The position numbers were made by a program, and so were the translations under genes. Under the pieces are notes generated by a model. The model did not search any database. It was not told the origin of the DNA and saw only the letters and a list, made by a program, of their open reading frames with translations. Below, in pieces: positions 27,570 to 57,736 of a DNA stretch of 64,000 nt. The stretch comes from Ascidiella aspersa (Eukaryota): assembly GCA_963924565.1 (NCBI GenBank), contig OZ004608.1, positions 16,306,001 through 16,370,000 of the forward strand. The letters are read 5' to 3'. Numbering within the stretch: the stretch's first letter is position 1; each line of letters starts with the position of its first letter.

Positions 27570-28628
27570 TGAACCCTGATTCACCCCGCCACCGGAACTG
27601 TACGCAATGTAATGTCAAACAATGTCGAAAAGCAAATAATTGATATCGGTAACAAGTCGTTTAACCCAATATGAACTCTCGAAGATTAAAATACGAATGC
27701 GCTTTGTTTGCTTTGAAAAAGTTACACTGTACTGGCGCTATCACAACTCGCTTGCTGGGATGGCTGGCGTGGCCTTTCTGTGACCTCGATTGCTGGTTTT
27801 TGCGCAAGGGACGCGCCCCACCTGACGGCGTCACGTGATCACAGATAAGGGTGGAGACAAGGCGCACTCGGCCTTCGTGTTATCAAAATGTACACAAACA
27901 GATTCCGCTGGATGTTCTGAAGGGAAAACAAATAGCAGAAAAAGTATGGACAAAAACACGAAACAAGGCTGAATGGCAATGGACACCAAGACTATATTGA
28001 GAAAAGAGAGAAGTGTAACCCAGCTGCTGTAACAAAATGAAGAAGCATCGTTATCAGGCGCGCCTCGGCCAACATCAGGTTCTAATCGGGATCGATCACC
28101 CGCAGAAAGCCGCGATTGGGGAATCTATCATCAATGCGAGCAAAGGTCGTCGGGCGACTAGTCGGGGCACGGCCTCACGCTGACCCCACCTTTGGCCGAC
28201 GCGTTTATTTAGTTTTCACTAAGCATCGCAAAGAATAATATTTAATAACTGGCTCGTGAAAATGTTTGCATTGCTGTTGTCGACGTCGGCGTTTTTTCGC
28301 AAATGCGCTATCGTCGACAAGAAGGAAACACGCATTAAGTTTCCCCTGCCGCCGCTGCGGTCGTTCGAGCTTCACTAGTAAACAAGCGGCTTTTTAACGG
28401 TAGGCAATGAACCATCGTTAACCCTGGATTGACCGCCGATGCTCGCGTTTTGTGATTGCGGTTTTGTTCGGTGCCAGAAAGTAAGATGGCGGAAGAAGCG
28501 AGAGCGTCGCGTTATTTTTGTGGCATTTCGCGGCGATCGAATGCGAGCGCGACCTGACCGGGTGAGATCGACGCAGCGAAAGACGAGCTGCGAAAGCAAC
28601 GAGGCAAAGTGGGGTGAAGGCGCGGTCA
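27570..28628. promoter_or_regulatory. Proximal DR5 RARE candidates 1-2 kb upstream of CYP26
   Basis: TGAACC-ctgat-TCACCC 27570-86; TGGCCT-ttctg-TGACCT 27770-86; TGAACC-atcgt-TAACCC-tggat-TGACCG 28408-35; 2-mismatch DR5s at 28170-86 and 28612-28. Confidence 0.6.
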
Positions 28629-30487
28629 GCGGCTGAGAACCTTCATCCACGATCGACCGGAACATGAGAGCGGACGCCGCTTTCGATTCTTATCGTCGCC
28701 GGGCCCGACAATCACTTGCGACCTCGGCCATTTCCCATCGAACACCTTATGGGTTTATCGGCAGCCTCGCAAAATGTAGACGCGACGACGGAAGAAATTG
28801 AACCACAGGGTTTAAAAGGACGCGCGAAACAACTCCCGTCGTATTGCCCGACCTTCTTTTTCCCAAAGATTAGGCGCAACAAATCTAGGAACGCATTTGA
28901 TGAGAGTGTGGAGTAGGCTCGGAATACACGGTGGTTACGGAGCACTCGATGCAATACATTACAATTGTTTTTTATACAAATAAAATATTAAAGAAACTTT
29001 ATTTTCTTAACTATGTAATCCTTATATATTTGATCAAGCGCTTTCTTTAATTACAGTAACAGGTTTACAGAAACAACAAGACTTATCAAATGAAAAGTTT
29101 TAAATGCAGTCCAACCGTATCGCAAAGGTTTAAGCCATTAAGAGCTTGATCAGGGGTACCATGTACGGTACATACTCGAAAACATGTCAGGTCAGGTTTC
29201 AAAATGCAAGCAAACCATACAAAGGCATTGTATTCGCATCGCAGAACGGTCTCGCAACTGTGGGAGTATGTCTGGAACCGGTCGTCAGCACAATGCATAT
29301 CAGGTTCGGCGTCGGATTATCGAAATGGTTGGCGTGAGACAGCAATTACGCCGATTCATGCTGTTTCAGGGACCTCGTCCTTTTCTGACGTCACGTAATC
29401 CGATCATCACTTAAAAAACTGAAATAATGAGGCGTTTGAAAAACAAGAGGTCGGTGATCAAACGTGGTTATAGATCGCACCAAAAATGTGCTGCAGTAAG
29501 GTGTGGTGGGGAGAAGCGATTTCGCTTCAAGAGTCAAACCGGCACTTCAGTTCTACAATCCGAGCGTATTTTGCTGACATGTCAACAAGCGCAGTTCCAC
29601 TGCCTCAGCTCGTCTTCTGTGCCGAAGTAAATAGTTCTGTGAATTATGTTTTCGTGGGTTGTGAACTTTTGGACTGCGCGAGGTCGCTGAACGTGTACGT
29701 ACACGATTTCCAGTTCAAACAAAACGCGTGGCAGCTTTAACGTCAAAATTTCCTCGCTCTTAACCGAAAGCGTCCAAGTTAAAATATTTCAAATTGTTTT
29801 TTTACGCATTAGTTAGTGCCGAAGTTTTCCGTTAACGCACAACGCGTCTTGTGTGAACCAGGATTAAGAGAATAAGATACTTGGACCGCAGCACACATAT
29901 TCCAGCTTTACGGGTTATTCGATCTATTTTTCTGTTATGTTTAATGTATTTTGTTTTCTAGTTTTTTTCGCGTAAAGCTACGGCTTTCCAGTTCTTCTAT
30001 AATTCCGATGCCGCGGGAGCTTGTATACGTTTTCAGCAACAGCGAATACGTTGGAAACTTGAGAGCGCCAACATTAGTAAGCACATTCCTGGGGCAAGAA
30101 GTTATGCTCTCGACCTGGGAGAGTTTATCCAGCTCGGTTTGTTTACTGAGCTTCGCGTGTGCACGGAGTCACATACACGTCACGTGACGTATCCAAGTTC
30201 TACAAGGCAAACTTTGCATGACCCGGTGGCTTCTCCGCGCCCACAAGCTTTACACGGGTTTCGAGTCCAAAGATGTTATCCCCACCACATCACTGACCGC
30301 AATCTCTTTGGCCGTTGCGTAATCCACGCCAGCGCGAACTTTATAGCTCTGTCACGAGAGCGATTAAGTTGGAACTTTTTCGATTGCGCAAAGTGGGGAT
30401 GAGATGCGATTTGGGAATAATAAAACTTTCCTATAAGCCGACGAGACGCAGTATAGCATAACGGGGTTACATTAGTTTGAGGAATTA

Positions 30488-33400
30488 GGATCAACGTAAG
30501 GTCACGGAAAGTTTGGAGTTCATTTCCTAAGCAATCAACATATGAAGATGGATTTGTTTGGACGGCGATTTTGGCGTTTTCCCGAAAGATGAAAACACTT
30601 GGCCTTTCGGTTACACTAATTTCCGTCTTTTAAATGGTAATCAAAAAAATATTGAAAACACAAATAGTTCTTACGTCAACCAACTAACGACAAAAGTGCA
30701 CAGAAGGGGCCGATAAAACTACATTGGTATAGGATGGATTACGCTATTTACTCTGTGGCGCGTTCCACTAGAAATAAAGATAAGTGCAGACCAATCGTCC
30801 CCCGAAATAACTTCCGGTGAGGTGAAAAGTTTAATCGCGATTTTGCGGCCTTTCGTCGCTGCCATAAGCATCTCTCGCGTTAAGATTGAAATTCGATAAT
30901 AGGTCGCCACCGCGTTTCGCGCTTCGCCTGACAATTTCCGAGAAATATTTTGCGAAAGTCGGAGAGAGACGATATTCCGACCGTGTCACAGCTGTGTTGG
31001 TAATTAAATAACTTCTGGCATGTGGACAAACAAGCCAAACCTTCTATAGGTGCAATGGCGGATGGGAGCGGCATTGATTAACGTTCGCTGTTTCTGCTGC
31101 GCCGAAGGTTTATTATCATTCACCTAGGCCTCGGCTGTCTACTGGGTTGCTAATCGTTTTCGGCGAGCGCTTTTTGCAAACTCCGTCGGGGGCAAATTCT
31201 GTTGAACTTTAGGTGGCCCGATGCAGCTTGCTGAAAATTGTTTACATTAGCAAGCAGACAGTCGAGCGGCCGGGGCAAAAAAGGTGGAGACTGCAAGTTT
31301 ACACAATATTCAATCTAATGCACGCTTGGCCACGAGTGCAGACCTTGGTTGTTTTGCAGCACTCGATCGATACGTGGGGGTAATTGGCGGATTTTATAGA
31401 GATTTTGGTTTTAAAACCTACAACGTCCCTGTATTTACTGATGAACAAAACAGCGAATATCAGAATGTGTTAGAAATAGTTTCAATTTGCCCGTGTCCAC
31501 CAAACTTTACTATTCAACCAAAAAAATCACACAATCTAGGCCTAATATTAAGTGTCTTTTGGGAAGAGCGCTAAACATAGCTCAAAATTCGTCATCATAA
31601 TTAACTCAAACAACAACAATAGTCAAGGCATGCGCAAAAACCTGCAGTTGACGGTCGCAAAAAAACGGCTGTTGCGACGAGCCGTGTTTCAACTCAATCG
31701 CAGAGAAAATACTTGAATCTGAGCCGTAGAATAAGACAAATCTACCACTCACAGACTTTCGCTGAGTGAAAACCTAATTTCTGTATTTTTTTTGTTAACT
31801 AGCTAACATTACCGCATTGGATCAATTGAAAAATATAACAAACCAACAAAAGGCCACCTCATGTGAACTGTTATTTGCAAATATATACAGAGTATAAACA
31901 GAAAATCCCAGTCGCGGTATCAACAAGATGTAGATAAGATTACTACTCGACCTTCAAAAAGACTTAAGGAGTGGAGGCCCAAAATAACTTTGCGTTAGTT
32001 GTTAATATATCTTAACGTTATAAGCAGATTTACGCAGTCTGATTAAGGCTTGTCAGGTAGCTACTTTACATATACATAACAGATCAAAATAGTGACCATT
32101 TGGCCTACACAAGAATGCAGGTGGTGTGACTAACCTATAAACAAATATTGTTATCATCGAACGCGCGCCCGTAACAAATTGCATTTAAGATTGTGAAATA
32201 TAAACAAATGTCGTAGGCCTAGTAAAAGACCGAGTATATTTAAAATACAAAATTATATAAAATAATAATACTAATTTGTACGCGAAAACAAATAATAGAC
32301 TATAGCCAGAGGACACCAAATTAAATTTTAAAAGTGAATTTACAAGGAATTTTATTTTGTTAAAAATTCACTTACAGTATAATATATAATTAGCATACTA
32401 AGTAGATTTAATATGCTTTTGAATGGCCAGGTGCGCCAATATAACCACACTAAGCGATGTTTTTGAAAGTAAAATTGTTCCTTAGGAACCAACTGTATAT
32501 GGCCTCCAATAATGCGGTGACCGTTATTTCAAAAAAACAAAATTACACACTAGTTAGTTTTCAGGCGCTTTAAAAAAAACAATAAATGAGGTTTGGCTGA
32601 TTGGGCTGTTTTATTGCGCATGTCTGGTGGTCTTATACCGCCGCAAAATGGCACTTTCATATAAGTTCACGCGGCCTCTAGATCAGGTGGCCGTCCAGCA
32701 TACGTGCCAGACAACATACCGAGCAAGACGGATGTCGGTCTGAGTCTTTCCGGGAAAACAGCTTCAAGAAAGCGTCGCACCAAAGCCGGTATAGGCGCTT
32801 CGATCGGCCCAAGCGCGTGAAATTAACTCATTAGCTTGAGCTAATGGGCGCGAAATTGCAGGTTCCGCGGAATCGCTCGCAAAAGGCGGCACGCGCCTAT
32901 GAGTTCGCCGCGACCGGGTCAATTCGTTTTTATCTGCTTACAATTCCAAACACGCGCTGCGAGGCGAATCCAGGGTCAATGTTGGAATTAGTTTTCTCCC
33001 GTGTCAGGAGCCGCAAACGCTTTTCGATAACATCGCCGCGTCTTCTTAAGTACAAGGTTCAACCCAGGGTTAAAGGATGAGCCAGTGTGGTGGTACGCTT
33101 AACATCGTCATCTGTTTTTACCTCGTAACCGACCTCAGAACGTGTGTTTAAGATCGAGTTATGCAAATAAAATTCAAATATAGCGATTCTTCTGCCAATT
33201 TTAAATTCTGTGTTTTAAGACAAATAAAGTAAAAAGTGGCCAGGAACGCCTGACTTAACCACCTGTACCATTATGCAAATCCAAACTTGAATTAAAAACG
33301 CAAGCGTTTGCAAAAAGTTACATTAGGTGTTGTACTTTTAATTCTAAAGCATCCTGGAATATTTCCGACACTAGTGATTTGCAACCACAAGATGACGTGC

Positions 33401-33909
33401 GGGAGCAAGCCAGATATCCAGTGACTGTGCGACTTAGTCGCGTCTCGAAAAACCGTCACGTAATTGTGAAAATACAATAGGCTCCGTTGGCCTATAAGTG
33501 AAGGCAGTGGAAAGGCTATCTGCAGCGTAACCGTGACCTCAGCACAACAGCACTGCAATGCACGTCACTACAGGGCACAACAAATGTGCATGCGACAGGT
33601 TTCCTAAAACTTTTCATTGACTGACCGCAAGCAAGACTGGTCAGCGACCCGACGACGAAAGTTCAACGCACTAGACTCGTGATCTGTAGAGGTCAGCCAA
33701 AGGAAAGACTGAACCGGCGATATTTTTGTTGCCAACCGCAGATATTAGCGGCGACGAGAGCCAAAACGTGTTCGATTTAAAGCAGTTGCGCTAATTGGTT
33801 CCACTTAAAATCGACTGCAGTACGATTAAAATCCCCAGCGTCAATTTGAAGACAATCTGTCAATTTATTATTCATATGACTGTTTGACCCGAAAAAAGGG
33901 TCATGACCT
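30488..33909. promoter_or_regulatory. Medial nuclear-receptor element cluster
   Basis: DR5s at 30488-504, 31203-19, 33056-72; three perfect half-sites TGACCC-n7-GGGTCA-TGACCT at 33885-909. Confidence 0.58.
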
Positions 33910-36900
33910 TCTGTATATCCTAAAACGAATTAACACCCTTCTATATAAACGACATCCCACTGTTACCCTTAATATATTTTTAAAAAAATGTTTTAAAGCT
34001 CTTAAAATCCTAACAAATATTGGCAGTAGGTGGTTCTATATATCGCTTATCAGCTTTAATCGATCGAAAGTATAACGGCTACCAAACTTGTTCAGTCTAA
34101 CCTGTTAACTTGAAAACGGAAGCATTCAATCAATATTATATGAAATCGATTCTAAAATCGATTACAAAACCTCGTGGCAATGTTTTATCGCTTAACTATC
34201 GATCAAACGACAAAGCGAACACACAAAGGCGGAACGGGAATGCCTGGCATCAATGGATAAAGGTAAATTTAATGCTGAAGCAATATTTAATTTCTTAAAA
34301 TGTTTGTTGCTTGCTTGGATGTGTCACTTATTTTGATGCAATCATACGATAATTAAACAAACAATTAATGTATAGTGCTACTTGTAAATATATATAGGAT
34401 GTATTTTTCATTTTTATGTTAGTGTTTTAAATTATTAAAAACACAATAAAACATTGCACGATGCCAATAAAATATAGTATCAGAACCGAAAACAGATACG
34501 AAGTTTTGCCTAAAATTACCACTCCGTCGTATAGTAGAAATTTAGCAATGTCATATAGTAAGCATTTCAATTTATATTTTAAAGTCACCGTAAGTGAAAC
34601 CGTCCCGTGTTTTTTATGATTTATCAAATAATATTAATTAAGGTCAACTTAATAATGTAAGTTTTTGTATCGGATTAAGGTGATAAATTTTACCAAGTTA
34701 TCGGATTTTAATATCGGAATAAAAATAACTACTGGATGTCCTTTCCGACAACAGCTGTGCAGCCCACTATACGTATCCGGTTAATCATCCAAAATAATTA
34801 AAACATTATTTTAAAATATAAACAAAGGTTATTAAGTATATAATTGCGCCGTTTTAAAAGAATAAAAATATGCAGATACATTTTAGTATTAGCAGCTAGA
34901 GAGTTTACAAGGCATTTGCTCGAAGTTCGACATAACAACCTTTGTTCAGCCGCATTTAGACACGACATATTACTGCTCGAAACAGCGCTTCACCATGTTT
35001 AACGAGGCCACACTTTTCGAGCCAAGCAAGGACAAATCGACCGGCGCTCACCTGGTTAAACAAGAATTCCATTACTCGAGTTTCACGTTAAACGCGCCTG
35101 CTGAAGACCGTGCTTGCTTTCACGGGCAATACACATCCACTTGTGCGGTGTCGATACCATAAGCTCTAGCGATGAGACCGGTACAGCGTTTACGGCGTAT
35201 ACTACGAAAAGGGCGCGACAAGGCCTGCGCTGACGAGCGAGGTTTCAGAGAAAATCGGAAGGAATTCGTTCGCAGGGGGGATGCATATATCGTCGCAAGC
35301 CCAGCTAATACGGGAAGCCTGGGTTAACGCAGAGTGCAGGCGGCGGCGTTGACAGTGCGCGGTCGGGGATAATATACGTCCAATGTGCCGAGGCCACGGT
35401 TGTTATCGAATAATCGATGGGAGACGACGGTGCGCTTCATCACGGCAGGATGCTCAATTGTTTCGCGTCGCGTGGTTGCCACCGCGCGCGCGCGGATGCG
35501 ACAAGACCCTCTGTGAAACTCGCGTCAATAACCAAGTAAAACTGAGCGGCTTGTTAGAGTAAGAGACGCTTGTGACAAACTCGAAGTCTCGCAAGTCAGC
35601 GGAGCCTTTGTTGCGTGCTTTAGCTATACGCCACTCGACTTGCTAGTTTATATACCGTTGTGTATGTGATATCAAAGCGTCTGCAACGCATCTGCTGGAC
35701 GGCCACCTGAAATCGATTAAACCCAAAGATTTCCGTTGAAAAACTTTTGTTTGGTCTTTGTAATATGGTACAAGATTACATCCAACTTAAACGCCTGGTG
35801 CAAAATATATAATAGGGTTATGCAAAGATTCGGGATATAGCGGATCAGTTAAGTGCTAAACCACACTGGTTTTGTGAATCGTGGGACACTTGAGCATGTA
35901 AGCCTCAACTTCTTGGCGCGCGCAAGTCGGCGGGGCAGCGAAGCGCAGAGGGTGAATTTGCTTGTTCAGCGATGACGCACTGGACACGATTGATTACGAC
36001 AGCGGACGCGAGCTCCTGGTTGGTTTGAACAAAGCGAAATCCGAAGATGCCGTGTCAAGTTTTGTTGGGAAAGGGGCGTGCGGCTTGTCAATGGTATTCG
36101 GCTGGTTGAGTAGCACGTGAGAGATTGCTCGTTGACTGCCGGCCTTTTATTAGGAAGGAAATGAACACAGCGATCCCCCGTAACGGTATCTGGTTGCGAG
36201 GTATAGGTGAGATGTTGTGTGTACTTTAAGCGTTCACCGATATATAATGCGGACCGTGACAAAATACCACCGAAACACAAAAGGACCCGCCGAAAGAGCG
36301 CGCAACCACAAGAGAGCACTTTTCCGGATTAATGTCAGGCGGGCGATTTATTTGGACCGGCTTATGTCGGTTTCGTTACGACGAGCCGCAAATATCACAA
36401 AACGAACGTAGGAAGCAAAGCTATCCGGCGGTTAACGCGCGAACAAAGTATAAAACCCCAATGAATGGCGCATTAAGACATATTGCCGGGCAGCGCGTCT
36501 GCACACTCCATCGTAAATTCGCGAATGAGACACGCGTGACATCCCTGGCCTTTATCTGACCTACAACATCGGATTATGTTCTTTATTAACATTCTTTTAG
36601 TGAAAATATCCAAAGCGATTGACTTTTGACAGATTTATTGTCGCAGTACAGTAAAAAACAGCCACACCCCCTTGCTTTACAAGTCCACAAAAACCTTTCC
36701 AAAATATAACAGTTGGAACAGGAACAGAAACACATTACACTTTTAGTAAGGGACAATAAATTTGAGAAAAGGACAGCTTTCACGCACCATCAAGAAACAA
36801 TGATGTCACAAACCTTCATGTTTACCCAATGCCACAGGGCGCATCCGCCATGAAAAGTCTAATAGGAAACGCTGGTTGTGGGTAAGGTGTCCTTTGGGTG

Positions 36901-39900
36901 AACCTTTCAGCAATGTATCGGGTCGTCGGTTATTGAGAAAACTTTACACAGGATTTAGGTCAAAGGGGCTTCGCGCTCCCAACCAAGAGAGGATGGAGGG
37001 TGTGCCCTTTCTTTGTAATAGAGAGAAGCTTCCCAATTTACCGTACTCTCGGCTTGCGTGCGAAGGGGGTGCGACTGTTGTACGACAACCCACTGCTTTC
37101 GGTATTACCTTTCGACCCCCTATTCGCAAAAGAGCACTTTAGCGACCCAAAACGTAGGGAGACAAAATGCTGAAAAAACAAAACAGTCAACCTCTGCGGC
37201 GTGCCAATGGTCTGACAACGACGGCTAACTGGTCCGTAAAAAGTGGTTTGCCAAAATAACAGGGTGTTGCTGCTTTTTGCACCTTCAGCAAGCAAGTAAC
37301 GGAAACTCAACACAGTCTCACCGGTGTTATTACAGTAACCAGCCTTTGTTGCCCACAAATCGGTTCCATACCTTGTTGCAGCTGAAGCAGGAAACGGCTT
37401 CTTTTCTTTTTAGGCGGCGGGCACACGGACCAAAAAGTCATATAAAGGCAATCGCAATATGTTTAATTAAATAACGATCTTGGCCTGAAAAATAACGGTT
37501 TTCGCTTATCAACTTTTTTTTTGTAGCTTTTTGAGTTTGTAGCTGTTTAAGGCTGTATGTTTAAAACAATGCAACATTCTTTTGAAGCCCACACAGTGTG
37601 CACACAGACAGAATGACAGGCCTGATAAAAATATTTGTTAAACGAGGTTACCGCTCAACACAAAATTGTGCCTGTAACAAGAGCATTTTTGAACAACACC
37701 TACCTACGCTGTATTGTAGCTTTTGAACCTAATATTTACTTTCAACATCCTAATAGATTCTTAGCTTTTATAATTATTTCCAGTCTTATGTGACCTCTTT
37801 TTTTGAAATCTGAAATTTTGCTCTCTGGCCACATTGCTATTATCACTGGCTATAATAGGGACTAGGATCTTGTACGCTTTATTCTTGATTTGGTTCTCGC
37901 GTTAGTTCAGCTTCGAAAACTCGAATGAGCGACAGGTTCGAAATGTCACGAACCCACTCCACACGGCTCCCAACCTCTAAAAACCCTTACTGCGAAACCG
38001 CAACTACATAAATTGCCAGATGGATAAAGGAAGTAGATTTGTTATGCCAGACGCAAGTGTTAAAAACGGATTGCTTTTCGCCCTCGAACAAGCTAACGTC
38101 TCTGCGCAATGCCACCATGTATTAAAGGTCGTAGCCCACAAAACGCACGAGGTCAGCGTCCAATGGATTATGAACAAGTACTTCCGAGTTTTGTGCCTCG
38201 GCATCGAGACTGTACGACGCCGAGTTGCAAATTGAACTCGTAGAAGATGTAAGGTCGGGCCGTAAGTTCAACATCACGTATATTTGTGCACTCACAGAGC
38301 CAGGAATGGTGTCCGTCTGTTGACCGATTGAAAATTACCTACGTTACATGTAGGTAAATAGTAGCCGGGGAGTTTAACCGCTCCTTCTACACCTGTGTCT
38401 TAAAGTGACAAACTACCGACAACTGCAATTTAAAAACCCAGGGCCGAACGAATCTAGAATTTGTTTTAAAAATGGAGTTTCACAATTTGTTTACCAATTT
38501 TACTAATGTTATGGCGCAATTTTGTGTTTGATCTCTTTCGTTGCAATAACATTTAACAACATTATAACACAACGCCCAAATATTTGCAGTACTTTCCCTC
38601 GTTAAAATGATAGATTATCTAGTATATTTACGGAATAGTGCCGTCATTTATAATAATATCTAATCACATATATATAAAAATATACGTGTCGTGATAATAA
38701 TCAGCGACAGTTGTAGGCAAAATACGCCGTGGAAATGACGCACATTGCTTTGCACGCGGCTACTTTTTTTCTAACAGCCAATAAATCGAACCAATCGGAA
38801 ATCATGTAATGTATCACTAAATAGTCGTAGACAGCTTGGCATTAATTTTTCATTATCTTCATCCGTTGGTCGCTGCTGCAAGAATATAAAGGCGTGAACG
38901 ACCTATCTTTTATTTAATCCACTCGTAATCTAAAATTTAAATAAAGGGCTACCCAGGATCCCAGTAACAACATTTTATAGAGCATAGGTCTGACTTTCCC
39001 CATAGGTACACAGAATATTATCGATTTACCACTAGAACCTAAGATATTGTCTTTCTTTTGTATAAAGCTGACATGCTCTCGTTCTAATTTTCAAATCAAA
39101 AAATCGTTTTCCTGTCAACTAAAACGTTATAGGTTACAATGCAGTAAAATACTACCAAATGATATCATTGCGAACACTAATGGGACTATTTACGTGCCAC
39201 CTTTAGTAAGTATTTAACGTGTTTTCACCGACCGATTAATGTTTACCAAAAACAACCGCACAAATAACTGCAAAGTCGGAATGTAGGGGTGGTTCAGATA
39301 AGCATCAGGAAAGCAGCCATTAAAGTCAACAAAGGATTCGCTGAGGCCTAACCTCGTCGATCAATTGCCGACTAGTTCAAAGCTCACCGACACCCGTCTT
39401 TGTACACAACCAGCGCAAAATAGAAGGGTTATAACGTGAAAATGCTTTCTGAAATCACAGCACTGCTTTTGAAATCATTTAGCAGATGGTGTTGGAGATA
39501 AAGTGATTTAAATTTTGTTTTTTAAGCGAAGGCGATTTGAGTGTGGTCCAGCGTAACGTCGTTGACTTGTAACACGTGACCAGCGAGCGCTAACAATGAC
39601 AGATGGACGGACCCCAAACACCCGACGGCTCAAGGCGCGACGGGAAAATGGCCGCCCACCGTCGGCTGTGGCGATTTCGTTGGAGGCGGCACAAAACAAC
39701 CGGCACGAAGCGCCCGTAATTGTTGCTTGGTGGAATTTTTCTTTATCGGCTGATGCTACTGGTTGACAATACGGTAACAGACAAAAACATGTAGTGGTAA
39801 ACGACGAATTACTCGATAAATCATTGAGTACTATAGCATTGAAGGTCAACTTATGTATATTTATCAATTTTACCGCCATTTTTCGACGTCCTTTAATGAT

Positions 39901-42900: not shown

Positions 42901-45900
42901 AGTCTTTTCAGGCGGTAGCACTCCTATTTTTTAATTTCGTTGATCGTTTTAATTTTGCTGTGTTTCTGAATGTAATGATTCTGCTTGGCAGCAATCCACC
43001 TAATTTGAAGTGTCATCAACGCGCAGTCAAACAAATATAATACGAACTCAAATTAAAACCAGAAGAATTCAGTTTCGATTGTAGTTTAATTGTCACATAC
43101 ATTTAACTTATAAACACAATTTGTCCTTACGTTTACTTGGCATATGTCACTCCCCAATTGTTGGCGATTGGTGCAAACTTGTTGATTGAAAAGCATCGTC
43201 CGCCACATTTTACCTGAAAATAAAATTAATTAAATCTTTAAATATGGTTGGTCACCGATAAAGATCGCGGACGAACAATGCAAATTTGTGAGCAAAAAAT
43301 TTCTTAGGCCGATTTAAAAGAGTTTTGCAATAAATCTATCCACCAAATAAAAGCGTTAAAATGAGATTGAAAAAACTTTTTCCTATTTTTATTCTCCAGC
43401 GGTTTATAAATATACAATTTAGGTAATTAACTATAAAATAAAAAATCATAGTTAACATATTGTTACCCAATAGGTCGCAATTTAACGTGCGTCCACGATT
43501 CGACAAATACATGACCGATACCTAGTTTGCATTTTAGGGAAAAAAATTAAATCACTTGCTGTGATATTTTTAGTAAATCATTATTTGGCATAAAAAAAGT
43601 ATTTGCTTTACATTATCTTGCAAAATATAAACTTTTAAAAATAATATCATTACATAAGTAAAATGATATTTCACAAAACTATGGACAAAAAAATGCTTTT
43701 TACGAATTCATTCCTTAAAGAACACTAAAATGTTTAATAACTCACTTTATTGTGCTATCTATACCGTGATAATTCTTGATTTGTTGTTCTATCTTCGTTG
43801 CGCTTCCGACAGCGAATGATCAATTCCTCCGTCAGATCGTCTCTTATGTACGCTGAACCGTGGTAGGCAGTCACGAAAGCAGCATTGTTCGACTACTAAC
43901 CTCCAACTGACCCTAAGCTAACTCCAAAGCGCTGCGGATCAAAAGTACCTAATTGTTGTTCGACGAAACTGCAGAGATACCAACTCCGAATTTTCGGGAT
44001 GCCCCAAATGCTCGGGGTTAGTTTTGCGGTTTTGTTCATTTTTACGCGCAAGGTTTTCCGTCTGGCCCGCGGAGATTTGCATTGTCGGGCGCATATCCTA
44101 CGTGGACCGACAAAGCACGCGGACACCGGGCAAGCGTTAAGTTGCCGCAATCCGATTAAGCCGCCGTCGTTACCGCTACCGCGTTTGCTCTTATAATCCT
44201 TTTGGTGGCTTTTCGGCGCGACCACCAACACGACAAATACCGGCTTAACATCAATGCAACAAGTTTTTGTTGTTGTCAAGTTGCGTCGCCGGTTGTTTAG
44301 TAGCTACATACCGCAGCAACGTCGCGGCGGGACCATCGGTTTAGTGCAACTCGCAGACTATGACCTACCCATTGCTGTCACAGTTGTCGGGCGATGATTT
44401 AGCGACATATACGTCCAGTCGTCCATTGCTGTGACGCCGTTGGTTTGCTCGCAACGACCCGCCTTCGAAGCTAATTTTACAAGGCTATCCAAATCGTGTC
44501 AAATAGCCACGCAGGCTGAACGATCACACAGCGGCTTAACTCCACTGGTGCTGATCAGCATGTGAAACAGGAAAGATTTTTGTTAAACATGATAAATTCT
44601 GCTACAACAAAACTGTATGCCGGTCCCAAAAGGCGACGCCACATCGTTGTTGCATGAATATATGCGGAAGGTTGCCGATGTTTTGCTGTGTTAGAATACA
44701 TATCTTTATCGCGCAGAACGAACGGTAAACAAATACCAGTGTCAACATTAGTCACTCAGCATAGCGGGCATGAACCTGCAAGGCAACATTTGCACTCTAA
44801 ATGACACTCTTCAAAACGTAGGATTAAGAAATAAGCCGTAAAACCTAAAGGGTGTGCTTATAGGACACCCATACTTGGAGGGTGGGACATTTATTCCTGG
44901 ACTGTTATACAAAATAGTCACTGTTATCGTCCGATTACTCAACTGTTTAAAATTTTGTTAAAAAAGTCAGTTGGTGTGCCGGCAATCGATGCGCTGTTAC
45001 AGTCGGTGGGCAAATTTCGCCGGTTCAGGTTCATTTGTGAGATCATGAAACGCATTTCCGACATGTGGCAAATTTAAATGGCTTAAAGAGTCACCTGGAT
45101 GACCGCGAGACGTGCCAGGGAGAAAGTGGTGGTGACACCCAACACGCCGCCAAACACGACCTGCAAATGACGAACCAAAAAACTTTTTAACGACTTCAAA
45201 GCCGTGGGGGGCATCCTCGGGATTGTTGAGACAAGAATCTGGGGTCTGTGGCGTGGGAACAGGGAGATAATCCGCTTTAGGCACCCCTTGATCGCCGATA
45301 CCCAGTGTACAGCCGGATAAATACGACGCTGTAATGGCGCTGCGCCTTTTCAGCTATACACTAAACGGCAACGCGGCTCTTGAATCAATCCGATTTAGGG
45401 GATTGAAATTTTAGTTTCCTTGTTTTGGCGATGCGGCGGGTGGTCCTTCCCCTTCTTTTATATTAAGCTCAATTATGGGCGCGATGTTGCGCAATTTGCG
45501 CCTGTAATGTAGTTAGCGATCGTAGGCGCGAACAAGAAGTCGTACAACTATTGCTGTCGAAGCTCAAAATGCAGTGCACAGTTGCCGATTCTCGGGGCAC
45601 ATTAGACACGCTACGGTGGACAGCTTGATTGCGCGCGCCCATACCACTGAACGAAAGGCAACAGATGCGCGGGAGATAATTATTGTAATCGGCTCGGTGC
45701 ACTTTTTACCCCAAAGTTGTTTTCGTCGAAGTTCGGGCGGCCCCCGACTGATCTGTTGGAAAACAACACAAAAAAGGCAACCGGCCGCGTAAGCCAGCCT
45801 ATTCTTCAAAACAGCACCTCTCCAGTGCGGGATGCCTGGAAGGGTCGGGAACCCTAATGAATCCGAAAGGGTAAGTTTAGTCGTACTAAAAAAACAAACG

Positions 45901-48762
45901 CAAAAAAAGATTGCTGGAAACAGCAGAAAAAGCAAAGGCGCTTGACTGGGGCGGCACTCACGCTCGGCGTTGATACATCAATAGACTTCGGCGACCCGCG
46001 GCAGCGACAAAGGCGGCAAGCTGAGCAAAGGCGCGACCAGGGGTGGCCCGGCACCGACACCGCTAATTTTACGCTCATCGGATGACAGTCGGACGAGCGT
46101 CGGCCAACGCTAATGAGCGTTTGATTGACGCGTCGCTTGACGAGTGCGCGCAGTTCGCAAGGGCGAGGAAAAGTCCGGCCGTTAAACAAACCCGACCGAC
46201 ACGTACGCAACCTGGCTTGGCCGCGAGCGAACAGCCACTGATCGGCGACTTTTACGACCACCGATGGTTTGTCCATTGATCTCATTTACAGAAATTCTTG
46301 AAAGGACCGGAAAGCGAATTATGCTGCCAGGAAACCCTAAAATAATTATGAACATATATACTTACGTTTAGATTGTTTGAGGATACGCTTACTTAATTTT
46401 TTTTTCCGAAATGCTTCTGCTGTTTCGTTGCTCGATTAGTTGATAGTATAAATTACAAACAAGGCCCCAAAAAGCCGCAAGGCAGTTAATAGGACGGTGC
46501 CCCTTGGATACCGCATTCATAAAAAAAATTATCAACCCTGAATTACAACCAAATGAACAACATGTTTAACAAGGCTCAGTTCGCGGGTGTGTGGTGAAAT
46601 TGCAATAAGTCTGCCGCGGTTTAAATTTAATCCGAAATATATTTTCAACAAAAAAAACTTTTTGTTTTGATTTCAAAAGGCACCAGCTTAAAAAGGTAAT
46701 ATTCAAAACCGTCAAGATGCCGATTTTAAAAATTGAACCTTTTTACGTAAAATAAATTATTTCACGTAAAGTTTAGGTAAAATGGAGTATTTTTCCCAAA
46801 ATTAATAAACCTATGACAAATAAAATGAGAACAAGTTGTAGCCCATTGCCGACATTGAGTGTAGCGAAGCACAAAAGGAAAATTAGTTTATAATTTGTTT
46901 TAATATAATGTTGCGTCATTATACCATTTGGTAAAAATAGCTTCCGGAATGAATGGACAACTAAATAAAAATTTATATAGTTTTGCCAATAGCCTAAGCG
47001 TACTAGTTTAAGCGTACTAGTTAAATCATCTAAAAAAATTCTTTGTTTAATCAATATATAATTGTTAGTGAAAGAAAAAACAGGTTTAAGAATTGAGAGC
47101 GGCGGACAGAAATAACAATCCTCGAAAGCATATTATTTATATAGTTATAAATGAAAAATTACAAAGCCTAAATCTCGCTAATTGAAAATCCATGAAGACA
47201 GAGGCAAAACGGTAACTGGGTCAAACATTTGTCTTTGTCAATTAAAAAGCTGCTGGCGCCAAATTTACCGCGCTGGCAGGTTGACCGCAGGCCGCAAAGT
47301 GACAACGGCGGCCTTGCTTTGCTTGTTGCCACTCCAATTAAGTTTTTTCGTTGGGCTTTATACAAACCCATAAAGCCGAAAACATGAGTTCGGTGGTATT
47401 TCTTAATTTTAAATTCGCTCACGACTGTATAACCTAAAAACACAGCTATGGTTAGCATTATCCAGAAACCAATATCTTTTAAGTTAGTAACGGCTTTTAA
47501 GTTAGTAACGACCCATAAAAAAATATATATAGGAATAAATTTAACTTCGATCGTTCAAATATGGTTGCACTCTTTCGGTCGGTTGCATTTCTTAAAAAAT
47601 TAGTTATTACTATGAAAATGGCGTTTGCAAATTTTGGCTATAACAGTTCTTTAATCCGTGATTTTAATATTGGAAAATAATTTCCTTTTAAAACCAGTAG
47701 CAAGTTTGCAGCTGCAATCCTTCCAAAATAATACCATTAAACGAGCCAAAGCATCAAGAGCACTTTCGGACATACCATGCCCTGTCAATAGGGTTTGATG
47801 GCGAAATAAAATCGCGCTGTTGAGAGCTGCGGGGATTAACCCGGGGTCCCAGGGACAGGGTGACGATTGAAGCTCCTGGGGTGGTTTACTGGGGTCAGGG
47901 CTCGGCCACGACCCTGAAGCGGAATTCACAGCCTGGTAAACGCAATTTCGCCCCGTCAACAGCCGCTCAGCATTAAAGGGCGCGATTTCGTGCTAAGAAG
48001 CAGGTTGGGACGTTGTACGGTGGTAAATTTGATTTTTTATTTCAGTTTTTAATATAAACCAAACTAAAAACGTTTCTATCTTCCGACTTATTTAATCTGA
48101 AATTTACGATTACCATGTTTTGATCGCAACTTAATTTTTAGTCTATACCATTGGGTTCATAAAAAAAATTACCGCACAACTTACTTGAAAATTAAAATAA
48201 TCGCAAATTTCTATTCGCTCTGATTGGGTTCGGGTACAGGTCTGCTGAATGTTTACCGTGGCTAGGAAAACATCGTCAGCACATTTTGGCAAGTAATTTT
48301 CGCCTGTAAAGTGGCCCTCACCTGCAAAGTGGCAACGCGTGGTTTGCGATGTTACAAAAATATCCATAAAAAACAGATGCCGCAACGACCCCTGTACTTA
48401 AGACTTCGTTCAAGCGTAAAAAGGTGAACGACGGGTTATGGCCTGGATTGCGCAAAGTAGGCTAGAGGCTCGATTTCGCAGCGGTCGCGACTTCAACAAA
48501 GCAAATTTGCCCAGCAATACGCTTGGATGGCTTTGGCTGCCACAAAATGGAGTTATTTTATTAAACTGGAGCACCACAGCTGCTGCGAACTTCGCCTGAC
48601 CCTCGTCGGTTGAGACGATATGTGAGGGGATAAAAGCAGGAAGAATGCGCACAATTGCCGTTGCCTTAGCAGTGGGCGACGACACCGTGCTTCCCAGAAC
48701 TTTGGCGATGGGGACAGCAACACAAACAAGCCCGACATGAATGCTGACGATTCTATGTGCGA

Positions 48763-48884
48763 TGAACTTTCGTCGAACTTTGCGGCAAGGACGGAAAACC
48801 ATATCCGCGCGGTTAAGCGCGAGTTCACGTGCTTACCTGCCTTAAGCCGTCGGGTCATCAAAAGGTCAGCGCCAGTAATTGGAC
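48763..48884. promoter_or_regulatory. Compound RARE module A (three DR5)
   Basis: TGAACT-ttcgt-CGAACT 48763-79; GGTTAA-gcgcg-AGTTCA 48811-27 overlapping CACGTG; perfect GGGTCA-tcaaa-AGGTCA 48852-68; CAGTAATTGGAC 48873-84. Confidence 0.8.
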
Positions 48885-49379
48885 TCGAAGTCGGCGTTGG
48901 ATGCAAATTTCGACTTTTGTAGGCAAAACACGCTGCACACGATTCTACATAAAATCATAGGTAACTTTAGGAATTCTTTAAACTCTAAAAACGTGAAACT
49001 TTAGGCCGCCCATTGTAAAGAGAAGCCACTTAAAAATCGTTGCAATTCCTAGTTTTTGAGTGAACAATATTATTAATTTCCAAAACACCTGAGTCTTTTT
49101 CATGCGTTGTTTCGACCTTATTTACCATTGATTTCTAACTTTTCGCATCTGATTTTACTTGGACCACCCAACCGGCTACTTAGTTTATTCCTTATTCTTT
49201 GCTTGAATGTGTACGTTTGGCACCTGCACCATTTTTTTTTCGCCCGCAGTGTTGGAAAAGATTGCGGGGATTCGGAAGTTAAATTTAGAAAAGGCTCAAA
49301 TCATCAAATTATCCCAACTATACGTCAAGCCACTTTGCTGGCCCCTTGTTTAAAGTCCCTTTTTTGGTTTTGTCTAAAT

Positions 49380-55300: not shown

Positions 55301-55829
55301 CTTATTTGTTGATGATACTTCGTGAAGTGATTTGAAATAAACTACCTATATGCAGTTCAGTTAAGTATTTAAAATACTAAAACTCTTTTTGTGTGGCTAA
55401 TGTGTTATAAGAACCACTGCTTCTCCTTGAATTTAATGTTTTGACGACAGCGATTGCAGATATGAGCTGACTGATAGAAGTTATTTTTGTTCGTATCGAG
55501 TTTGAAATGTCGTATTATTTGTAACCAGTAAGTTATATGAATTATATTCTCGCTGACCAATTGTCTTCCTAGAAACCAAAAAACTATCACCTACATGTAA
55601 AAAAACATTGGATTTCATAAAATAAAATTTACGTAGTGAATGTAGCCTAAAACGGAAGAACTCCACCGACCACGGTTCAACAAACGTTTAAACATTGACC
55701 TCATAAACCAATATAGTTTCTCTGGGATTGCTTTAACCAGCCTTGAATTGAGATACAAGTAAGCGAACAAATATATAAAAAGTCCACCATTGTTTGCTAA
55801 ATAAAAGCCGAAGAAGTTATTTACCGAGC

Positions 55830-55990
55830 TTCGTTGAACTACGGTAACCGTGCGGTTCATCGTAAGTTCACGTGCGCGCGCAGCTCGTACCTAAGGTAGG
55901 TTCGGGTCAATCGAAGGTCACCGGCAGTAATTGGACACGGAGCCGGGATTAAGCCTGACATTTTCAAAGGACTGGCCGGTCAAAAGTTCA
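55830..55990. promoter_or_regulatory. Compound RARE module B (two perfect DR5 plus DR2)
   Basis: GGTTCA-tcgta-AGTTCA 55854-70 overlapping CACGTG; GGGTCA-atcga-AGGTCA 55904-20; CAGTAATTGGAC 55925-36; CGGTCA-aa-AGTTCA 55977-90. Confidence 0.82.
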
Positions 55991-57736
55991 ACGAAAAACA
56001 ACCTCCTTCGCCACGGAACCTTACATGAAAGACAATGATAAGTGGCCTTAATCAGAAGTAGGTGCGTTCTGTAAATCACTACAAACAAAAAAACGCTTAG
56101 CTCACGTAGTTTTGGGTGCAACAGTAAATTTGGCAGCTTGCGTAAGTAAAATGCTGACGGGAAGAGGGCGGGTTTAGAAGAAGCCATGGTATCCAATCAA
56201 CACCACAAAATATGGTTATAATCAACGACACAAATTACACAATTTTATATGACCTGATATTGTCATTTATTGTGGATAACTTTTTGGAGCTGATTCCAAA
56301 AATGTAAGCACGTTTTTTCTATCGTCGATCGTTTGCTGGCAGTAAGTAGATTTGGCCTAAACGGGTTATGCGTTTAGCTAACCAGCTAATAATGCACATA
56401 CACAACATGTAGAACATTAAAATTTATTAATCTTCCAAGATTATTTATATGTATAGGGCGATTATTTTTTTACTTTAGAAATAGGAAATTTTGACCTATT
56501 GGAATACATTGATTTAATCAAAGCGTTGTTGTATGAATTAGCCTACTGCAATGATGTCTTGGCGTCGTCAGTCACTTGTTTATAAATACTGACGAGTGAC
56601 GACCGGTGGAACACAAATCAATTATTGTCGGGTTTATGCAAAACTCTTTTGAAATGCCAAGTTAGTATTTTTGGTACATTAAAAAGACAAACAACTTTTA
56701 AAATGCCACAAGAAGGGCAAGACGCTGGTAATTTAGGACATTGCTGAGTAAACATTTTGATTGAATTGCAAGTAAATAGATGGCAAAATGAAATATATGT
56801 CGGTTCTGCAGTGATATTTCATAAATTACACAGTGCTTTTTTGGTTTACTACACTATAAATGCCATTATATCATTCTTTATTCTAGTTTCTTTATGTGCA
56901 TTATGTATGCCTAACTTTTTTGACCACCCCTGCTTATTACACAGCCTACTGCGATGTCAGAAAAAAAAAGCTTGCTCTTTTTACCAAGAAAATAGGACGT
57001 TTCGGATTAAATGGGAAGAGCAGCATTTTTAAAATGAAATGGACAAAACTATGCTCTATTTGCTTTAGATTTTACACTTGTTAAATTGCATGATCTATCT
57101 ACGCCCTACGGGTCGGGCTCCCTTTTAAAATCGACCGTTTAAATTTGGCTAGGATGCTAACAAAGGTTAAGAACCACTGGTCCATGCCCTTGTAGTTCTT
57201 CTTAACCACAACGGACAGCAATAGTTTAAATTGAAACAAAAATCCGCACTCGATATACATATAAACAAACCTTCCCCTTTTGCAAGAAACTGTTTCTGCC
57301 AACAGCGATTTATTTTCATGGTAAACAAACAAAACGCAAAAGAATGTGTCAGCGATATGGCAGTTCAAAGGTTATACAGCACATAGAACGCCTGGATATT
57401 TTAAATAGATTTTGGATTTAGAATATCGAATTTTCTTATGTGTAGTATTTATGCTAAATATCGAAAAATACTTGGCGTATCATATGGCCAAAACAAATAG
57501 GTAATAACTACAAAGCATAATTGTTCGTTTTTAGAAACAGATAACGTCGAGTTGGACAAAACAAAAACTTTTGTATGATGTTTGTTTATTTTCGTTTTGT
57601 TGGTATTCTTGATCGAAACTGCTGAGAGAAAGCGCACACTTTCAAATTTCAATTTTCGCGGTCACAGTAGGGGCATTATTTTTAAACCTCATTTAAGTCA
57701 TCTTCAGAAGATGTTTTACCAAATGTTCGTCGTATC

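What the first reader, a model, noticed from the sequence alone, without database searches (positions are those of the whole stretch)
27570..57374. RARE archipelago: at least 14 near-perfect DR5 elements across the 31-kb desert upstream of CYP26
Seen (RGKTCA-n5-RGKTCA, at most 1 mismatch) starting at 27570, 27770, 28408, 30488, 31203, 33056, 36888, 43897, 48586, 48763, 48811, 48852, 55854 and 55904; the last three are perfect. A uniform-composition estimate for 31 kb on both strands gives about 0.06 perfect and about 1.7 with at most 1 mismatch. Ten of 14 spacers end in A (cagaa, cctaa, cccaa, acgaa, tcaaa, tcgta...), resembling the classic ccgaa/cccaa spacers, a bias my search did not impose. 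Established: CYP26 genes are direct RAR/RXR feedback targets, with only a few characterised RAREs in vertebrate Cyp26a1. Inference: a large, affinity-graded RA-sensing landscape giving dose- and tissue-specific feedback.
Basis: partly seen in the sequence, partly recalled or inferred. Interest (0 to 1): 0.8.

Follow-up and report, generated by a model that had tools for sequence, protein, structure and literature searches.

The report
DR5 retinoic-acid elements upstream of tunicate CYP26
The 29 kb upstream of a tunicate CYP26 gene (the enzyme that destroys retinoic acid) holds 16 retinoic-acid-receptor-type DR5 sites where about 2 are expected, most likely the wiring of the known retinoic-acid self-limiting loop, not yet described in tunicates.

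Summary
All 14 listed DR5 sites (RGKTCA-n5-RGKTCA, at most 1 mismatch) exist. My scan finds 16 between 27.5 and 56 kb, 3 of them perfect.

- **Excess:** every other direct, inverted or everted spacing gives 0-5. Block-wise dinucleotide shuffles give 1.2 ± 1.1, the whole genome 2.2 per 31 kb, and flanks and random controls are at background.
- **Not repeats:** the sites tested are single-copy. None lies in a tandem array or a recent internal duplication.
- **Unimposed RARE features:** G-first 5' half-site, A-ending spacer and A-first 3' half-site match classic RAREs.
- **The gene:** a seven-exon CYP26 on the minus strand, closest to Phallusia and Ciona CYP26, so the genome is a tunicate.
- **Receptors:** the genome encodes two RAR-type DNA-binding domains and one RXR-type.
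- **Internal control:** the only two single-copy tandem pairs of perfect DR5s in 308 Mb lie here and about 11 kb upstream of an RAR gene.

Best reading (0.75): a homotypic cluster of RAR/RXR response elements that lets retinoic acid induce CYP26. Binding, RA response and the "affinity-graded" idea are untested. This is a new member of a known kind, like the vertebrate Cyp26a1 RAREs and the 13 conserved DR5s of amphioxus. The scan had already noted parts of this same stretch (s1-794400, s1-794457).

The parts
17443..26056 (-). CYP26 gene with seven coding exons: 26056-25655, 22917-22777, 22387-22193, 21139-20891, 20221-19910, 18223-18071, 17655-17443. At least one more 5' exon lies upstream.
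   Evidence: tblastn of Phallusia CYP26B1 (P0002) and a Ciona savignyi P450 (P0004) gives collinear exons. Pfam p450 scores 3e-17 on one exon. The haem motif FGCGPRVCLG is present. The named relatives are all CYP26. An RNA-like contig covers 25654-26058 and carries 109 more 5' letters.
24146..24162 (+). Intronic DR5 with 1 mismatch, GGGTCAggcgcCGGTCA, in CYP26 intron 1
27570..27586 (-). DR5, 1 mismatch: GGGTGAatcagGGTTCA (proximal island)
27661..27677 (-).
27770..27786 (-). DR5, 1 mismatch: AGGTCAcagaaAGGCCA
28408..28424 (-). DR5, 1 mismatch: GGGTTAacgatGGTTCA
30488..30504 (+). DR5, 1 mismatch: GGATCAacgtaAGGTCA. A divergent marine-metagenome contig keeps both half-sites while the spacer and flanks change.
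31203..31219 (-). DR5, 1 mismatch: GGGCCAcctaaAGTTCA
33056..33072 (+). DR5, 1 mismatch: GGTTCAacccaGGGTTA. It overlaps a DR1 at 33049.
36546..36562 (-).
36888..36904 (-). DR5, 1 mismatch: GGTTCAcccaaAGGACA
43897..43913 (-). DR5, 1 mismatch: GGGTCAgttggAGGTTA
48422..48438 (+). Weak DR5, 2 mismatches: AGGTGAacgacGGGTTA, at the edge of module B
48586..48602 (-). DR5, 1 mismatch: GGGTCAggcgaAGTTCG (module B)
48763..48779 (-). DR5, 1 mismatch: AGTTCGacgaaAGTTCA (module B). It is one base from the AGTTCA-n5-AGTTCA signature of vertebrate Cyp26a1 R1.
   Evidence: PMC5247814
48811..48832 (+). DR5, 1 mismatch: GGTTAAgcgcgAGTTCA, with the CGTGC extension (overlapping E-box CACGTG), module B
48852..48884 (+). 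Perfect DR5 GGGTCAtcaaaAGGTCA followed by the shared 12-mer CAGTAATTGGAC (48873-48884), module B
   Evidence: The module is single-copy in the genome.
55854..55875 (+). Perfect DR5 GGTTCAtcgtaAGTTCA with the CGTGC extension (E-box CACGTG), module C
   Evidence: The module is single-copy.
55904..55936 (+). Perfect DR5 GGGTCAatcgaAGGTCA followed by CAGTAATTGGAC (55925-55936), module C
55977..55990 (+). DR2, 1 mismatch: CGGTCAaaAGTTCA, beside module C

Best explanation
The 29 kb upstream of a tunicate CYP26 gene is a homotypic cluster of DR5-type retinoic-acid response elements, spread over about six islands. RAR/RXR heterodimers, both encoded in this genome, would sit on these sites and switch CYP26 transcription on when retinoic acid (RA) rises. 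RA would thereby induce its own breakdown, which is negative feedback.

Shown here:
- the spacing-specific excess of DR5 sites;
- RARE-like sequence features that the search did not impose;
- the identity of the gene as CYP26;
- the presence of RAR-type and RXR-type DNA-binding domains in the genome;
- a parallel tandem DR5 module at an RAR locus.

Inferred, not shown:
- receptor occupancy of the sites;
- RA-dependent enhancer activity;
- that CYP26 is the gene they act on;
- any division of labour among the islands (robustness, sensitivity or tissue specificity).
For: 1. **Excess.** There are 16 DR5 against 1.2 +/- 1.1 in shuffles, 2.2 per 31 kb in the genome, and 0-5 for every other DR, IR or ER spacing. 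Flanks and random controls are at background.
2. **Not repeats.** Modules B and C are single-copy. No site lies in a tandem array. The region's only internal similarity that touches a DR5 is one 45-bp match at 80% between modules B and C.
3. **Features not imposed by the search**. The 5' half-site starts with G in 12 of 16 sites. The spacer ends in A in 11 of 16 (binomial P = 0.0015). The 3' half-site starts with A in 12 of 16. That gives GGKTCA-nnnnA-AGKTCA. From my own knowledge, this is the form of the RARbeta2 and Hoxa1 RAREs. The spacer bias is also near the amphioxus consensus (PMC5247814).
4. **The gene is CYP26.** The best relatives that were looked up are all CYP26: Phallusia CYP26B1 and a Ciona savignyi P450 at 58%, then Styela, amphioxus and vertebrate CYP26A1/B1/C1. 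Seven exons are collinear with them. The haem motif is present.
5. **Receptors.** Two RAR-type DNA-binding domains score 71-75 bits against RARalpha/beta/gamma, with the next family at 59-63 bits. One RXR-type domain scores 86.5 bits.
6. **Internal control.** Genome-wide there are 16 matches for tandem perfect DR5 pairs 15-45 bp apart. By their sequences, 14 are satellite or repeat-family copies. The other two are CYP26 module C and a site about 11 kb upstream of the RAR DBD exons on C9, both single-copy.
7. **Literature.** RA strongly up-regulates Ci-cyp26 in Ciona, and DEAB removes its anterior expression (PMC3458022). Twelve of 13 conserved DR5s in the amphioxus CYP26 cluster bind RAR/RXR (PMC5247814). 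A distal RARE enhancer controls mouse Cyp26a1 (PMC13738024).
8. **Weak footprint.** A metagenome contig that differs at 15 of 143 bases keeps both half-sites of the DR5 at 30488, while two spacer bases and the flanks differ.
Against: - There are no binding, chromatin or RA-treatment data for this organism.
- About 2 of the 16 sites are expected by chance. Thirteen have a mismatch, some at positions that weaken binding (GGGTGA, AGGCCA, GGTTAA).
- The transcription start site is not mapped.
- Target assignment rests on proximity alone. CYP26 is the nearest promoter, and the next recognisable gene is a methyltransferase at about +82 kb whose 3' end faces the cluster.
- Ciona has been described as having a reduced ability to respond to RA (PMC3227721).
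Confidence: 0.75

Rival explanations
1. The DR5 sites are real regulatory elements, but another nuclear receptor uses them instead of RAR/RXR. Candidates are COUP-TF/NR2F-like, TR-like or NR1I/J-like receptors. CYP26 would then be controlled by a different ligand or an orphan receptor.
For: The genome has about 21 nuclear-receptor genes, several with the same P-box. Half-sites as such are also enriched, 86 against 47 expected. Many receptors recognise RGKTCA.
Against: The excess is confined to the 5-bp spacing, which is the RAR/RXR preference. From my own knowledge, TR and VDR-type partners prefer DR4 and DR3, and both are at background here. The same module type sits at the RAR gene itself. 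RA induces cyp26 in Ciona (PMC3458022).
Confidence: 0.1
2. Only a few sites work as RAREs, namely the two distal double modules and perhaps the proximal trio. The other near-matches would be decaying or neutral by-products. Alternatively, the cluster serves another gene or a non-coding transcript rather than CYP26.
For: Thirteen of the 16 sites are imperfect. Only modules B and C share extended grammar. No transcript or contact data exist. RNA reads at 27.1-27.5 kb are unexplained.
Against: Chance accounts for only about 2 of the 16 sites. The imperfect sites share the unimposed G...A-A asymmetry. No protein-coding gene was recognised between 27 and 82 kb, and CYP26 is the nearest promoter.
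Confidence: 0.12
3. The cluster is an artefact of base composition, low-complexity sequence, transposons or segmental duplication.
For: Elsewhere in this genome many perfect DR5s do come from an 11-bp-period repeat family and from satellites. A dispersed 160-bp repeat sits at 29709-29870.
Against: Block-wise dinucleotide shuffles never exceed 5. Other spacings are at background. The modules are single-copy. No DR5 lies in a tandem array or in the dispersed repeat. Self-comparison finds no duplication beyond one 45-bp match between modules B and C.
Confidence: 0.01

Closest known systems
Amphioxus CYP26 cluster RAREs (Carvalho et al. 2017, PMC5247814)
   Same: Many DR5 elements are scattered around CYP26 genes of an invertebrate chordate: 13 conserved DR5s, 12 bound by RAR/RXR in EMSA. 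The half-site consensus and the purine-rich end of the spacer are similar, and the feedback logic is the same.
   Different: Here there is one gene with 16 sites in 29 kb of upstream desert, against about 4 per gene for three tandem genes in amphioxus. This is a tunicate lineage. No binding or conservation data exist here. Two composite double modules have no described amphioxus counterpart.
Vertebrate Cyp26a1 proximal and distal DR5 RAREs (R1, R2 and a distal enhancer; PMC13738024, PMC5247814)
   Same: DR5 elements upstream of CYP26 mediate direct RAR/RXR induction, with proximal elements plus a distal enhancer. Site 48763 (AGTTCGacgaaAGTTCA) is one base from the conserved AGTTCA-n5-AGTTCA signature.
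   Different: Vertebrates have a handful of characterised elements, whereas this locus has 16 candidates over 29 kb. No sequence homology of the enhancers can be claimed.
RARbeta2-type autoregulatory DR5 at RAR genes (my own knowledge of the vertebrate promoter)
   Same: A tandem pair of perfect DR5s, GGTTCAaacatAGTTCA and AGTTCAtgcagAGTTCA, lies about 11 kb upstream of this genome's RAR DBD exons in the gene's orientation. It shares the AGTTCACNTGC extension with the CYP26 modules.
   Different: It is a single compact module, not an archipelago: 3 DR5 in 30 kb. Its position relative to the RAR transcription start is unknown.
Ciona Hox1 epidermal RARE (Kanda et al. 2009, as cited in PMC3227721 and PMC3458022)
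   Same: It is the only RARE stated in those papers to have been identified in a tunicate. It shows that tunicate RAR/RXR can use such elements.
   Different: It is a single element at a Hox gene. The library searched holds no paper describing RAREs of a tunicate CYP26.

Membership tests
DR5-type retinoic acid response element (RAR/RXR) | Two RGKTCA half-sites in direct repeat, separated by exactly 5 bases | tested here: met
   16 sites with at most 1 mismatch, 3 of them perfect
DR5-type retinoic acid response element (RAR/RXR) | Occurrence beyond chance and specific to the 5-base spacing | tested here: met
   16 against 1.2 (shuffles), 2.2 (genome) and 0-5 for other DR, IR and ER spacings
DR5-type retinoic acid response element (RAR/RXR) | The organism encodes RAR and RXR | tested here: met
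   Two RAR-type DBDs and one RXR-type DBD on C9. Their best solved relatives are RARalpha/beta/gamma and RXRalpha. Ligand-binding domains were not examined.
DR5-type retinoic acid response element (RAR/RXR) | Physical binding by the RAR/RXR heterodimer | not testable with these tools
   Needs EMSA, ChIP or CUT&RUN
DR5-type retinoic acid response element (RAR/RXR) | RA-dependent activation of the linked gene | not testable with these tools
   Shown for Ci-cyp26 in Ciona (PMC3458022), not for this species
DR5-type retinoic acid response element (RAR/RXR) | Half-sites conserved in related genomes | tested here: inconclusive
   At one site (30488), a divergent metagenome contig keeps both half-sites while the spacer and flanks change. 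Other species' loci could not be fetched.
CYP26 (retinoic acid hydroxylase) gene | P450 domain with a haem-binding Cys motif | tested here: met
   Pfam p450 at 3e-17 on one exon; FGCGPRVCLG
CYP26 (retinoic acid hydroxylase) gene | Closest named relatives belong to CYP26 rather than other P450 families | tested here: met
   Ten of the best-scoring full-length hits were looked up. Seven are named CYP26A1, B1 or C1. Three are unnamed P450s of Ciona savignyi, Owenia and Lottia. The rest of this genome matches Phallusia CYP26B1 at 36% or less, against 50-55% for this gene. Searching solved structures could not discriminate.
CYP26 (retinoic acid hydroxylase) gene | Full-length collinearity with a CYP26 protein | tested here: met
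   Seven exons cover residues 49-658 of Phallusia CYP26B1 and 2-500 of the Ciona savignyi protein.
CYP26 (retinoic acid hydroxylase) gene | Oxidation of retinoic acid | not testable with these tools
   Needs an enzyme assay
Repeat- or transposon-borne DR5 | Sites lie in multi-copy or tandemly repeated sequence | tested here: not met
   Modules are single-copy. No DR5 lies in a tandem array. The one dispersed repeat found (29709-29870) holds no DR5. The 18-kb search was saturated by that repeat, so low-copy repeats at the other sites are not excluded.

The most novel reading that the evidence does not exclude
The tandem double-DR5 module, whose first 3' half-site overlaps an E-box (AGTTCA-C-N-TGC: CACGTG, CACCTG or CACTTG), is a dedicated cis-code for retinoic-acid feedback genes in this tunicate. 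The pattern RGKTCA-n5-AGTTCAC[CG]TGC has exactly two perfect matches in 308 Mb, at CYP26 and at RAR. With one mismatch allowed, four of the nine matches fall in these two loci. The module would integrate RAR/RXR with a bHLH-type factor. At CYP26 it would also integrate a homeodomain factor through the shared CAGTAATTGGAC. Together with 12 or more further DR5s, this would make CYP26 the most heavily RA-wired gene of a lineage that has been described as having reduced RA responsiveness.
Probability: 0.3. Interest if true: 0.65.

Novelty: new member of a known kind. Interest (0 to 1): 0.5.

Why it matters
Direct induction of CYP26 by RAR/RXR is the core negative feedback of retinoic-acid signalling. 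Its cis-elements are known in vertebrates and amphioxus. For tunicates, the papers I read mention only one RARE, at Ciona Hox1, and one of them describes Ciona as having a reduced ability to respond to RA.

A 16-site DR5 landscape at CYP26, with a matching module at RAR, would show that the feedback wiring is intact and elaborate in a tunicate. It would close the gap between amphioxus and vertebrates. It also supplies a compact, testable set of candidate enhancers for electroporation assays. The two distal double modules are the obvious first candidates.

Tried and rejected
**Explanations rejected**
- Composition artefact: rejected by block-wise dinucleotide shuffles.
- A general half-site effect: rejected because the other DR, IR and ER spacings are at background.
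- Transposon or satellite origin: rejected for modules B and C and by the tandem-repeat scan.
- Segmental duplication: rejected by self-comparison.
- Structured RNA genes in the desert: none in Rfam and no tRNA.
- Protein-coding genes in the desert: the larger ORFs have no Pfam match.

**Steps that gave nothing**
- The word-index protein search with one exon gave a single unnamed fragment.
- The solved-structure search could not separate CYP26 from CYP3A or CYP120.
- "Organism B" (run X3) turned out to be the same species, so it gave no phylogenetic footprint.
- The metagenome scan for the module grammar found nothing.

- The protein Atlas and the look-up of encoding contigs were closed. I could not inspect the Styela, Ciona or amphioxus CYP26 flanks.
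That limited the random controls to 130 kb and left parts of the flanks unread.

**Left out by rule**
- The spliced CYP26 model was searched exon by exon.


Full report
**1. The observation**

An exhaustive scan of both strands for RGKTCA-n5-RGKTCA with at most one mismatch finds 16 sites between 27,570 and 55,920. The two extra sites are 27661(-) and 36546(-). Three sites are perfect: 48852, 55854 and 55904. One further site lies in CYP26 intron 1 (24146).

The excess is confined to the 5-base spacing.
- Direct repeats with spacers 0-4 and 6-12 give 0-4 hits in the same 31 kb.
- Inverted and everted repeats give 0-2, with one value of 5 at IR11.
- With two mismatches allowed, DR5 still leads: 47 against 11-29 for DR0-4 and DR6-8.

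**2. Is it more than chance?**

Three independent backgrounds agree.
- Dinucleotide-preserving shuffles in 1-kb blocks, 300 replicates, give 1.23 +/- 1.09 DR5 (maximum 5) and 0.04 perfect.
- The whole 308.6-Mb assembly holds 1,231 perfect DR5s and 21,554 with at most one mismatch. That is 0.12 and 2.17 per 31 kb.
- Poisson P(>=16 | 2.17) is 1.5e-9. This is about 1.5e-5 after allowing for roughly 10,000 windows of this size.
- The genome figure is itself inflated. An abundant repeat family (GGTTCAGCTCCGGTTCA, an 11-bp period) creates DR5s automatically.
- Ten 10-kb stretches of the flanks hold 0-2 DR5 each. 130 kb taken at fixed positions on nine chromosomes give 0.95 per 31 kb.

So the cluster is local and ends at about 56 kb.

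**3. Not repeats**

- Modules at 48,350-49,000 and 55,600-56,100 are single-copy in the genome.
- The three small tandem arrays in the region hold no DR5.
- Self-comparison of 26-58 kb finds three short matches. Only one touches a DR5: a 45-bp, 80% match between the two distal modules.
- A dispersed 160-bp repeat at 29,709-29,870, with more than 300 candidate copies, holds no DR5.
- That repeat saturated the 18-kb search. Low-copy repeats at the other sites are therefore not formally excluded.

**4. The sites look like RAREs in ways the search did not impose**

When the sites are oriented as direct repeats:
- the 5' half-site begins with G in 12 of 16;
- the last spacer base is A in 11 of 16, against a 0.30 background (binomial P = 0.0015);
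- the 3' half-site begins with A in 12 of 16.

The consensus is GGKTCA-nnnnA-AGKTCA. From my own knowledge, this is the form of the classic RARbeta2 and Hoxa1 elements (GGTTCA-ccgaa-AGTTCA). It is also close to the spacer bias reported for RAR/RXR-bound amphioxus DR5s (NNN(A/G)(A/C/G); PMC5247814).

**5. The gene and the organism**

A P450 gene lies on the minus strand.
- tblastn with the two best full-length relatives gives seven collinear exons from 26,056 to 17,443.
- The haem motif FGCGPRVCLG is present.
- An exhaustive profile search with the largest exon was followed by a name look-up. It gives Phallusia mammillata CYP26B1 (58% identity), a Ciona savignyi P450 (58%), Styela clava CYP26B1-like, amphioxus CYP26 and vertebrate CYP26A1/B1/C1.
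- No other locus in this genome matches Phallusia CYP26B1 nearly as well: 36% or less, against 50-55%.

The exons were searched one by one.

The genome is therefore a tunicate, nearest to phlebobranch ascidians. It has nine chromosome-scale contigs and about 21 nuclear-receptor genes.

An RNA-like contig covers 25,654-26,058 with 109 further 5' letters. So at least one more 5' exon exists and the start site is not mapped. The proximal DR5 trio (27,570-27,786) lies 1.6-1.8 kb upstream of the first Met of the mapped exon.

No Pfam-recognisable ORF lies between 27 kb and a methyltransferase ORF at about 82 kb, whose 3' end faces the cluster. CYP26 is therefore the nearest promoter.

**6. The receptors exist**

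Among the nuclear-receptor DNA-binding-domain exons:
- two loci on C9 (13.85 and 14.34 Mb) read ...YKPC(F/C)VCGD(K/R)SSGYHYGV.SCEGCK / GFFRRSVQKN...;
- they score best against solved RARalpha/beta/gamma (71-75 bits), with the next family at 59-63 bits;
- a third locus (9.96 Mb) is RXR-type, at 86.5 bits.

**7. An internal positive control**

I searched the whole genome for two perfect DR5s 15-45 bp apart and found 16 matches. By their sequences, fourteen are satellite or repeat-family copies. The two single-copy ones are:
- CYP26 module C, at 55,854-55,920;
- C9:14,356,341-14,356,392, about 11 kb upstream of the RAR-type DBD exons and in that gene's orientation.

CYP26 and RAR are the two classic feedback targets of RA signalling. 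The chance that a random site falls within 15 kb of either of two RAR genes is about 2e-4.

The RAR locus has only this compact module, 3 DR5 in 30 kb. The archipelago is peculiar to CYP26.

**8. Module grammar**

- Modules B (48.8 kb) and C (55.9 kb) have the same order of elements: [GGTT(A/C)A-n5-AGTTCA]CGTGC, then 19 or 28 bases, then [GGGTCA-n5-AGGTCA], then 4 bases, then CAGTAATTGGAC.
- The 11-mer AGTTCACGTGC and the 12-mer CAGTAATTGGAC each occur only twice in the 64-kb window.
- Both DR5s of the RAR module are followed by CCTGC or CTTGC.
- Genome-wide, RGKTCA-n5-AGTTCAC[CG]TGC has exactly two perfect matches, at CYP26 and at RAR. With one mismatch allowed, 4 of the 9 matches are in these two loci.
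- The total count equals that of the reversed control pattern (9 against 8). The motif is therefore not common. It is concentrated at these loci.
- The 3' half-site thus overlaps an E-box (CANNTG). What reads it is unknown.

**9. Footprint**

Run X3 ("organism B") proved to be the same species. The marine metagenome X5 contains a divergent contig over 30,415-30,557 with 15 differences in 143 bases. Of the nine differences listed for it, none falls in the 12 half-site positions of the DR5 at 30,488. Two fall in its spacer and the rest in the flanks. This fits constraint on the half-sites but is not significant on its own (P about 0.26).

**10. Literature**

- In Ciona, RA strongly up-regulates Ci-cyp26 throughout the tail epidermis, and DEAB abolishes its anterior domain (PMC3458022).
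- Vertebrate Cyp26a1 is driven by proximal DR5s and a distal RARE enhancer (PMC5247814, PMC13738024).
- In amphioxus, 13 conserved DR5s lie in the three-gene CYP26 cluster, and 12 bind RAR/RXR in vitro (PMC5247814). That study screened several other phyla for the AGTTCA-n5-AGTTCA signature. The passages I read do not report tunicate loci.
- For tunicates, only the Ciona Hox1 epidermal RARE is mentioned (PMC3227721).
- Three full-text searches returned no paper whose title or abstract concerns RAREs of a tunicate CYP26.

**11. Verdict**

The best explanation is a homotypic cluster of RAR/RXR DR5 elements through which RA induces CYP26 (confidence 0.75).

The "affinity-graded, dose- and tissue-specific" reading is untested. 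The only relevant pattern is that the perfect sites are distal and the imperfect ones proximal.

It is a new member of a known kind. It is notable for its density at a single gene and for the shared composite module at the RAR locus.

**Limits**
- There are no binding, chromatin or RA-response data.
- The genome-wide rank of the cluster was not computed.

Noticed in passing
G000:C9:14356336-14356392 (locus L048:5336-5392, minus strand): Tandem pair of perfect DR5s (GGTTCAaacatAGTTCA, then 18 bases, then AGTTCAtgcagAGTTCA), about 11 kb upstream of RAR-type DBD exons. It is single-copy. A third DR5 with 1 mismatch lies at 14355604. This looks like an RAR autoregulatory element.
   Followed up: partly
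window 48822-48832 and 55865-55875; L048:5371-5381: The 3' half-site AGTTCA is followed by C(G/C/T)TGC, so an E-box (CACGTG, CACCTG or CACTTG) overlaps the DR5. The extended pattern has only two perfect matches in the genome, at CYP26 and at RAR. What reads it is unexplained.
   Followed up: partly
window 48873-48884 and 55925-55936: The shared 12-mer CAGTAATTGGAC, with a homeodomain-like TAATTG core, sits 4 bases after the second DR5 of both distal modules. It occurs nowhere else in the window.
   Followed up: partly
window 29709-29870: A dispersed repeat of about 160 bp, with more than 300 candidate copies at 73-88% identity. It reaches very high depth in RNA-like and metagenome contigs. It has no Rfam or tRNA match, so it may be a SINE- or MITE-like element.
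   Followed up: partly
window 11896-12454, and genome-wide (e.g. G000:C1:11422557): An 11-bp-period GGTTC-rich repeat family (GGTTCAGCTCCGGTTCA and variants) produces many perfect DR5s by construction. Any genome-wide RARE scan of this species must mask it.
   Followed up: partly
window 25655-26056, and upstream to about 26649: The CYP26 protein has a long N-terminal extension before the membrane anchor. Phallusia CYP26B1 (660 aa) aligns from residue 49 or 50, so this may be a tunicate feature. An upstream exon is implied by an RNA-like contig.
   Followed up: partly
window 8394-10328 (+): Two large exons of a major-facilitator (MFS_1) transporter gene lie downstream of the CYP26 3' end.
   Followed up: no
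G000:C3:22399193-22434877: Three P450 genes with large C-terminal exons are 33-36% identical to Phallusia CYP26B1. They may be divergent CYP26-clan paralogues. This was not resolved.
   Followed up: no
G000:C2:32842803-32858608: A tandem array of intronless P450 genes: five full-length copies (495-501 aa, E about 1e-100 against Pfam p450) plus one split into two matches.
   Followed up: no
L021:8107-9063 (window-equivalent 82107-83063, minus strand): A single-ORF class I methyltransferase (Methyltransf_11, 1.9e-20). It is the next recognisable gene beyond the DR5 desert.
   Followed up: no
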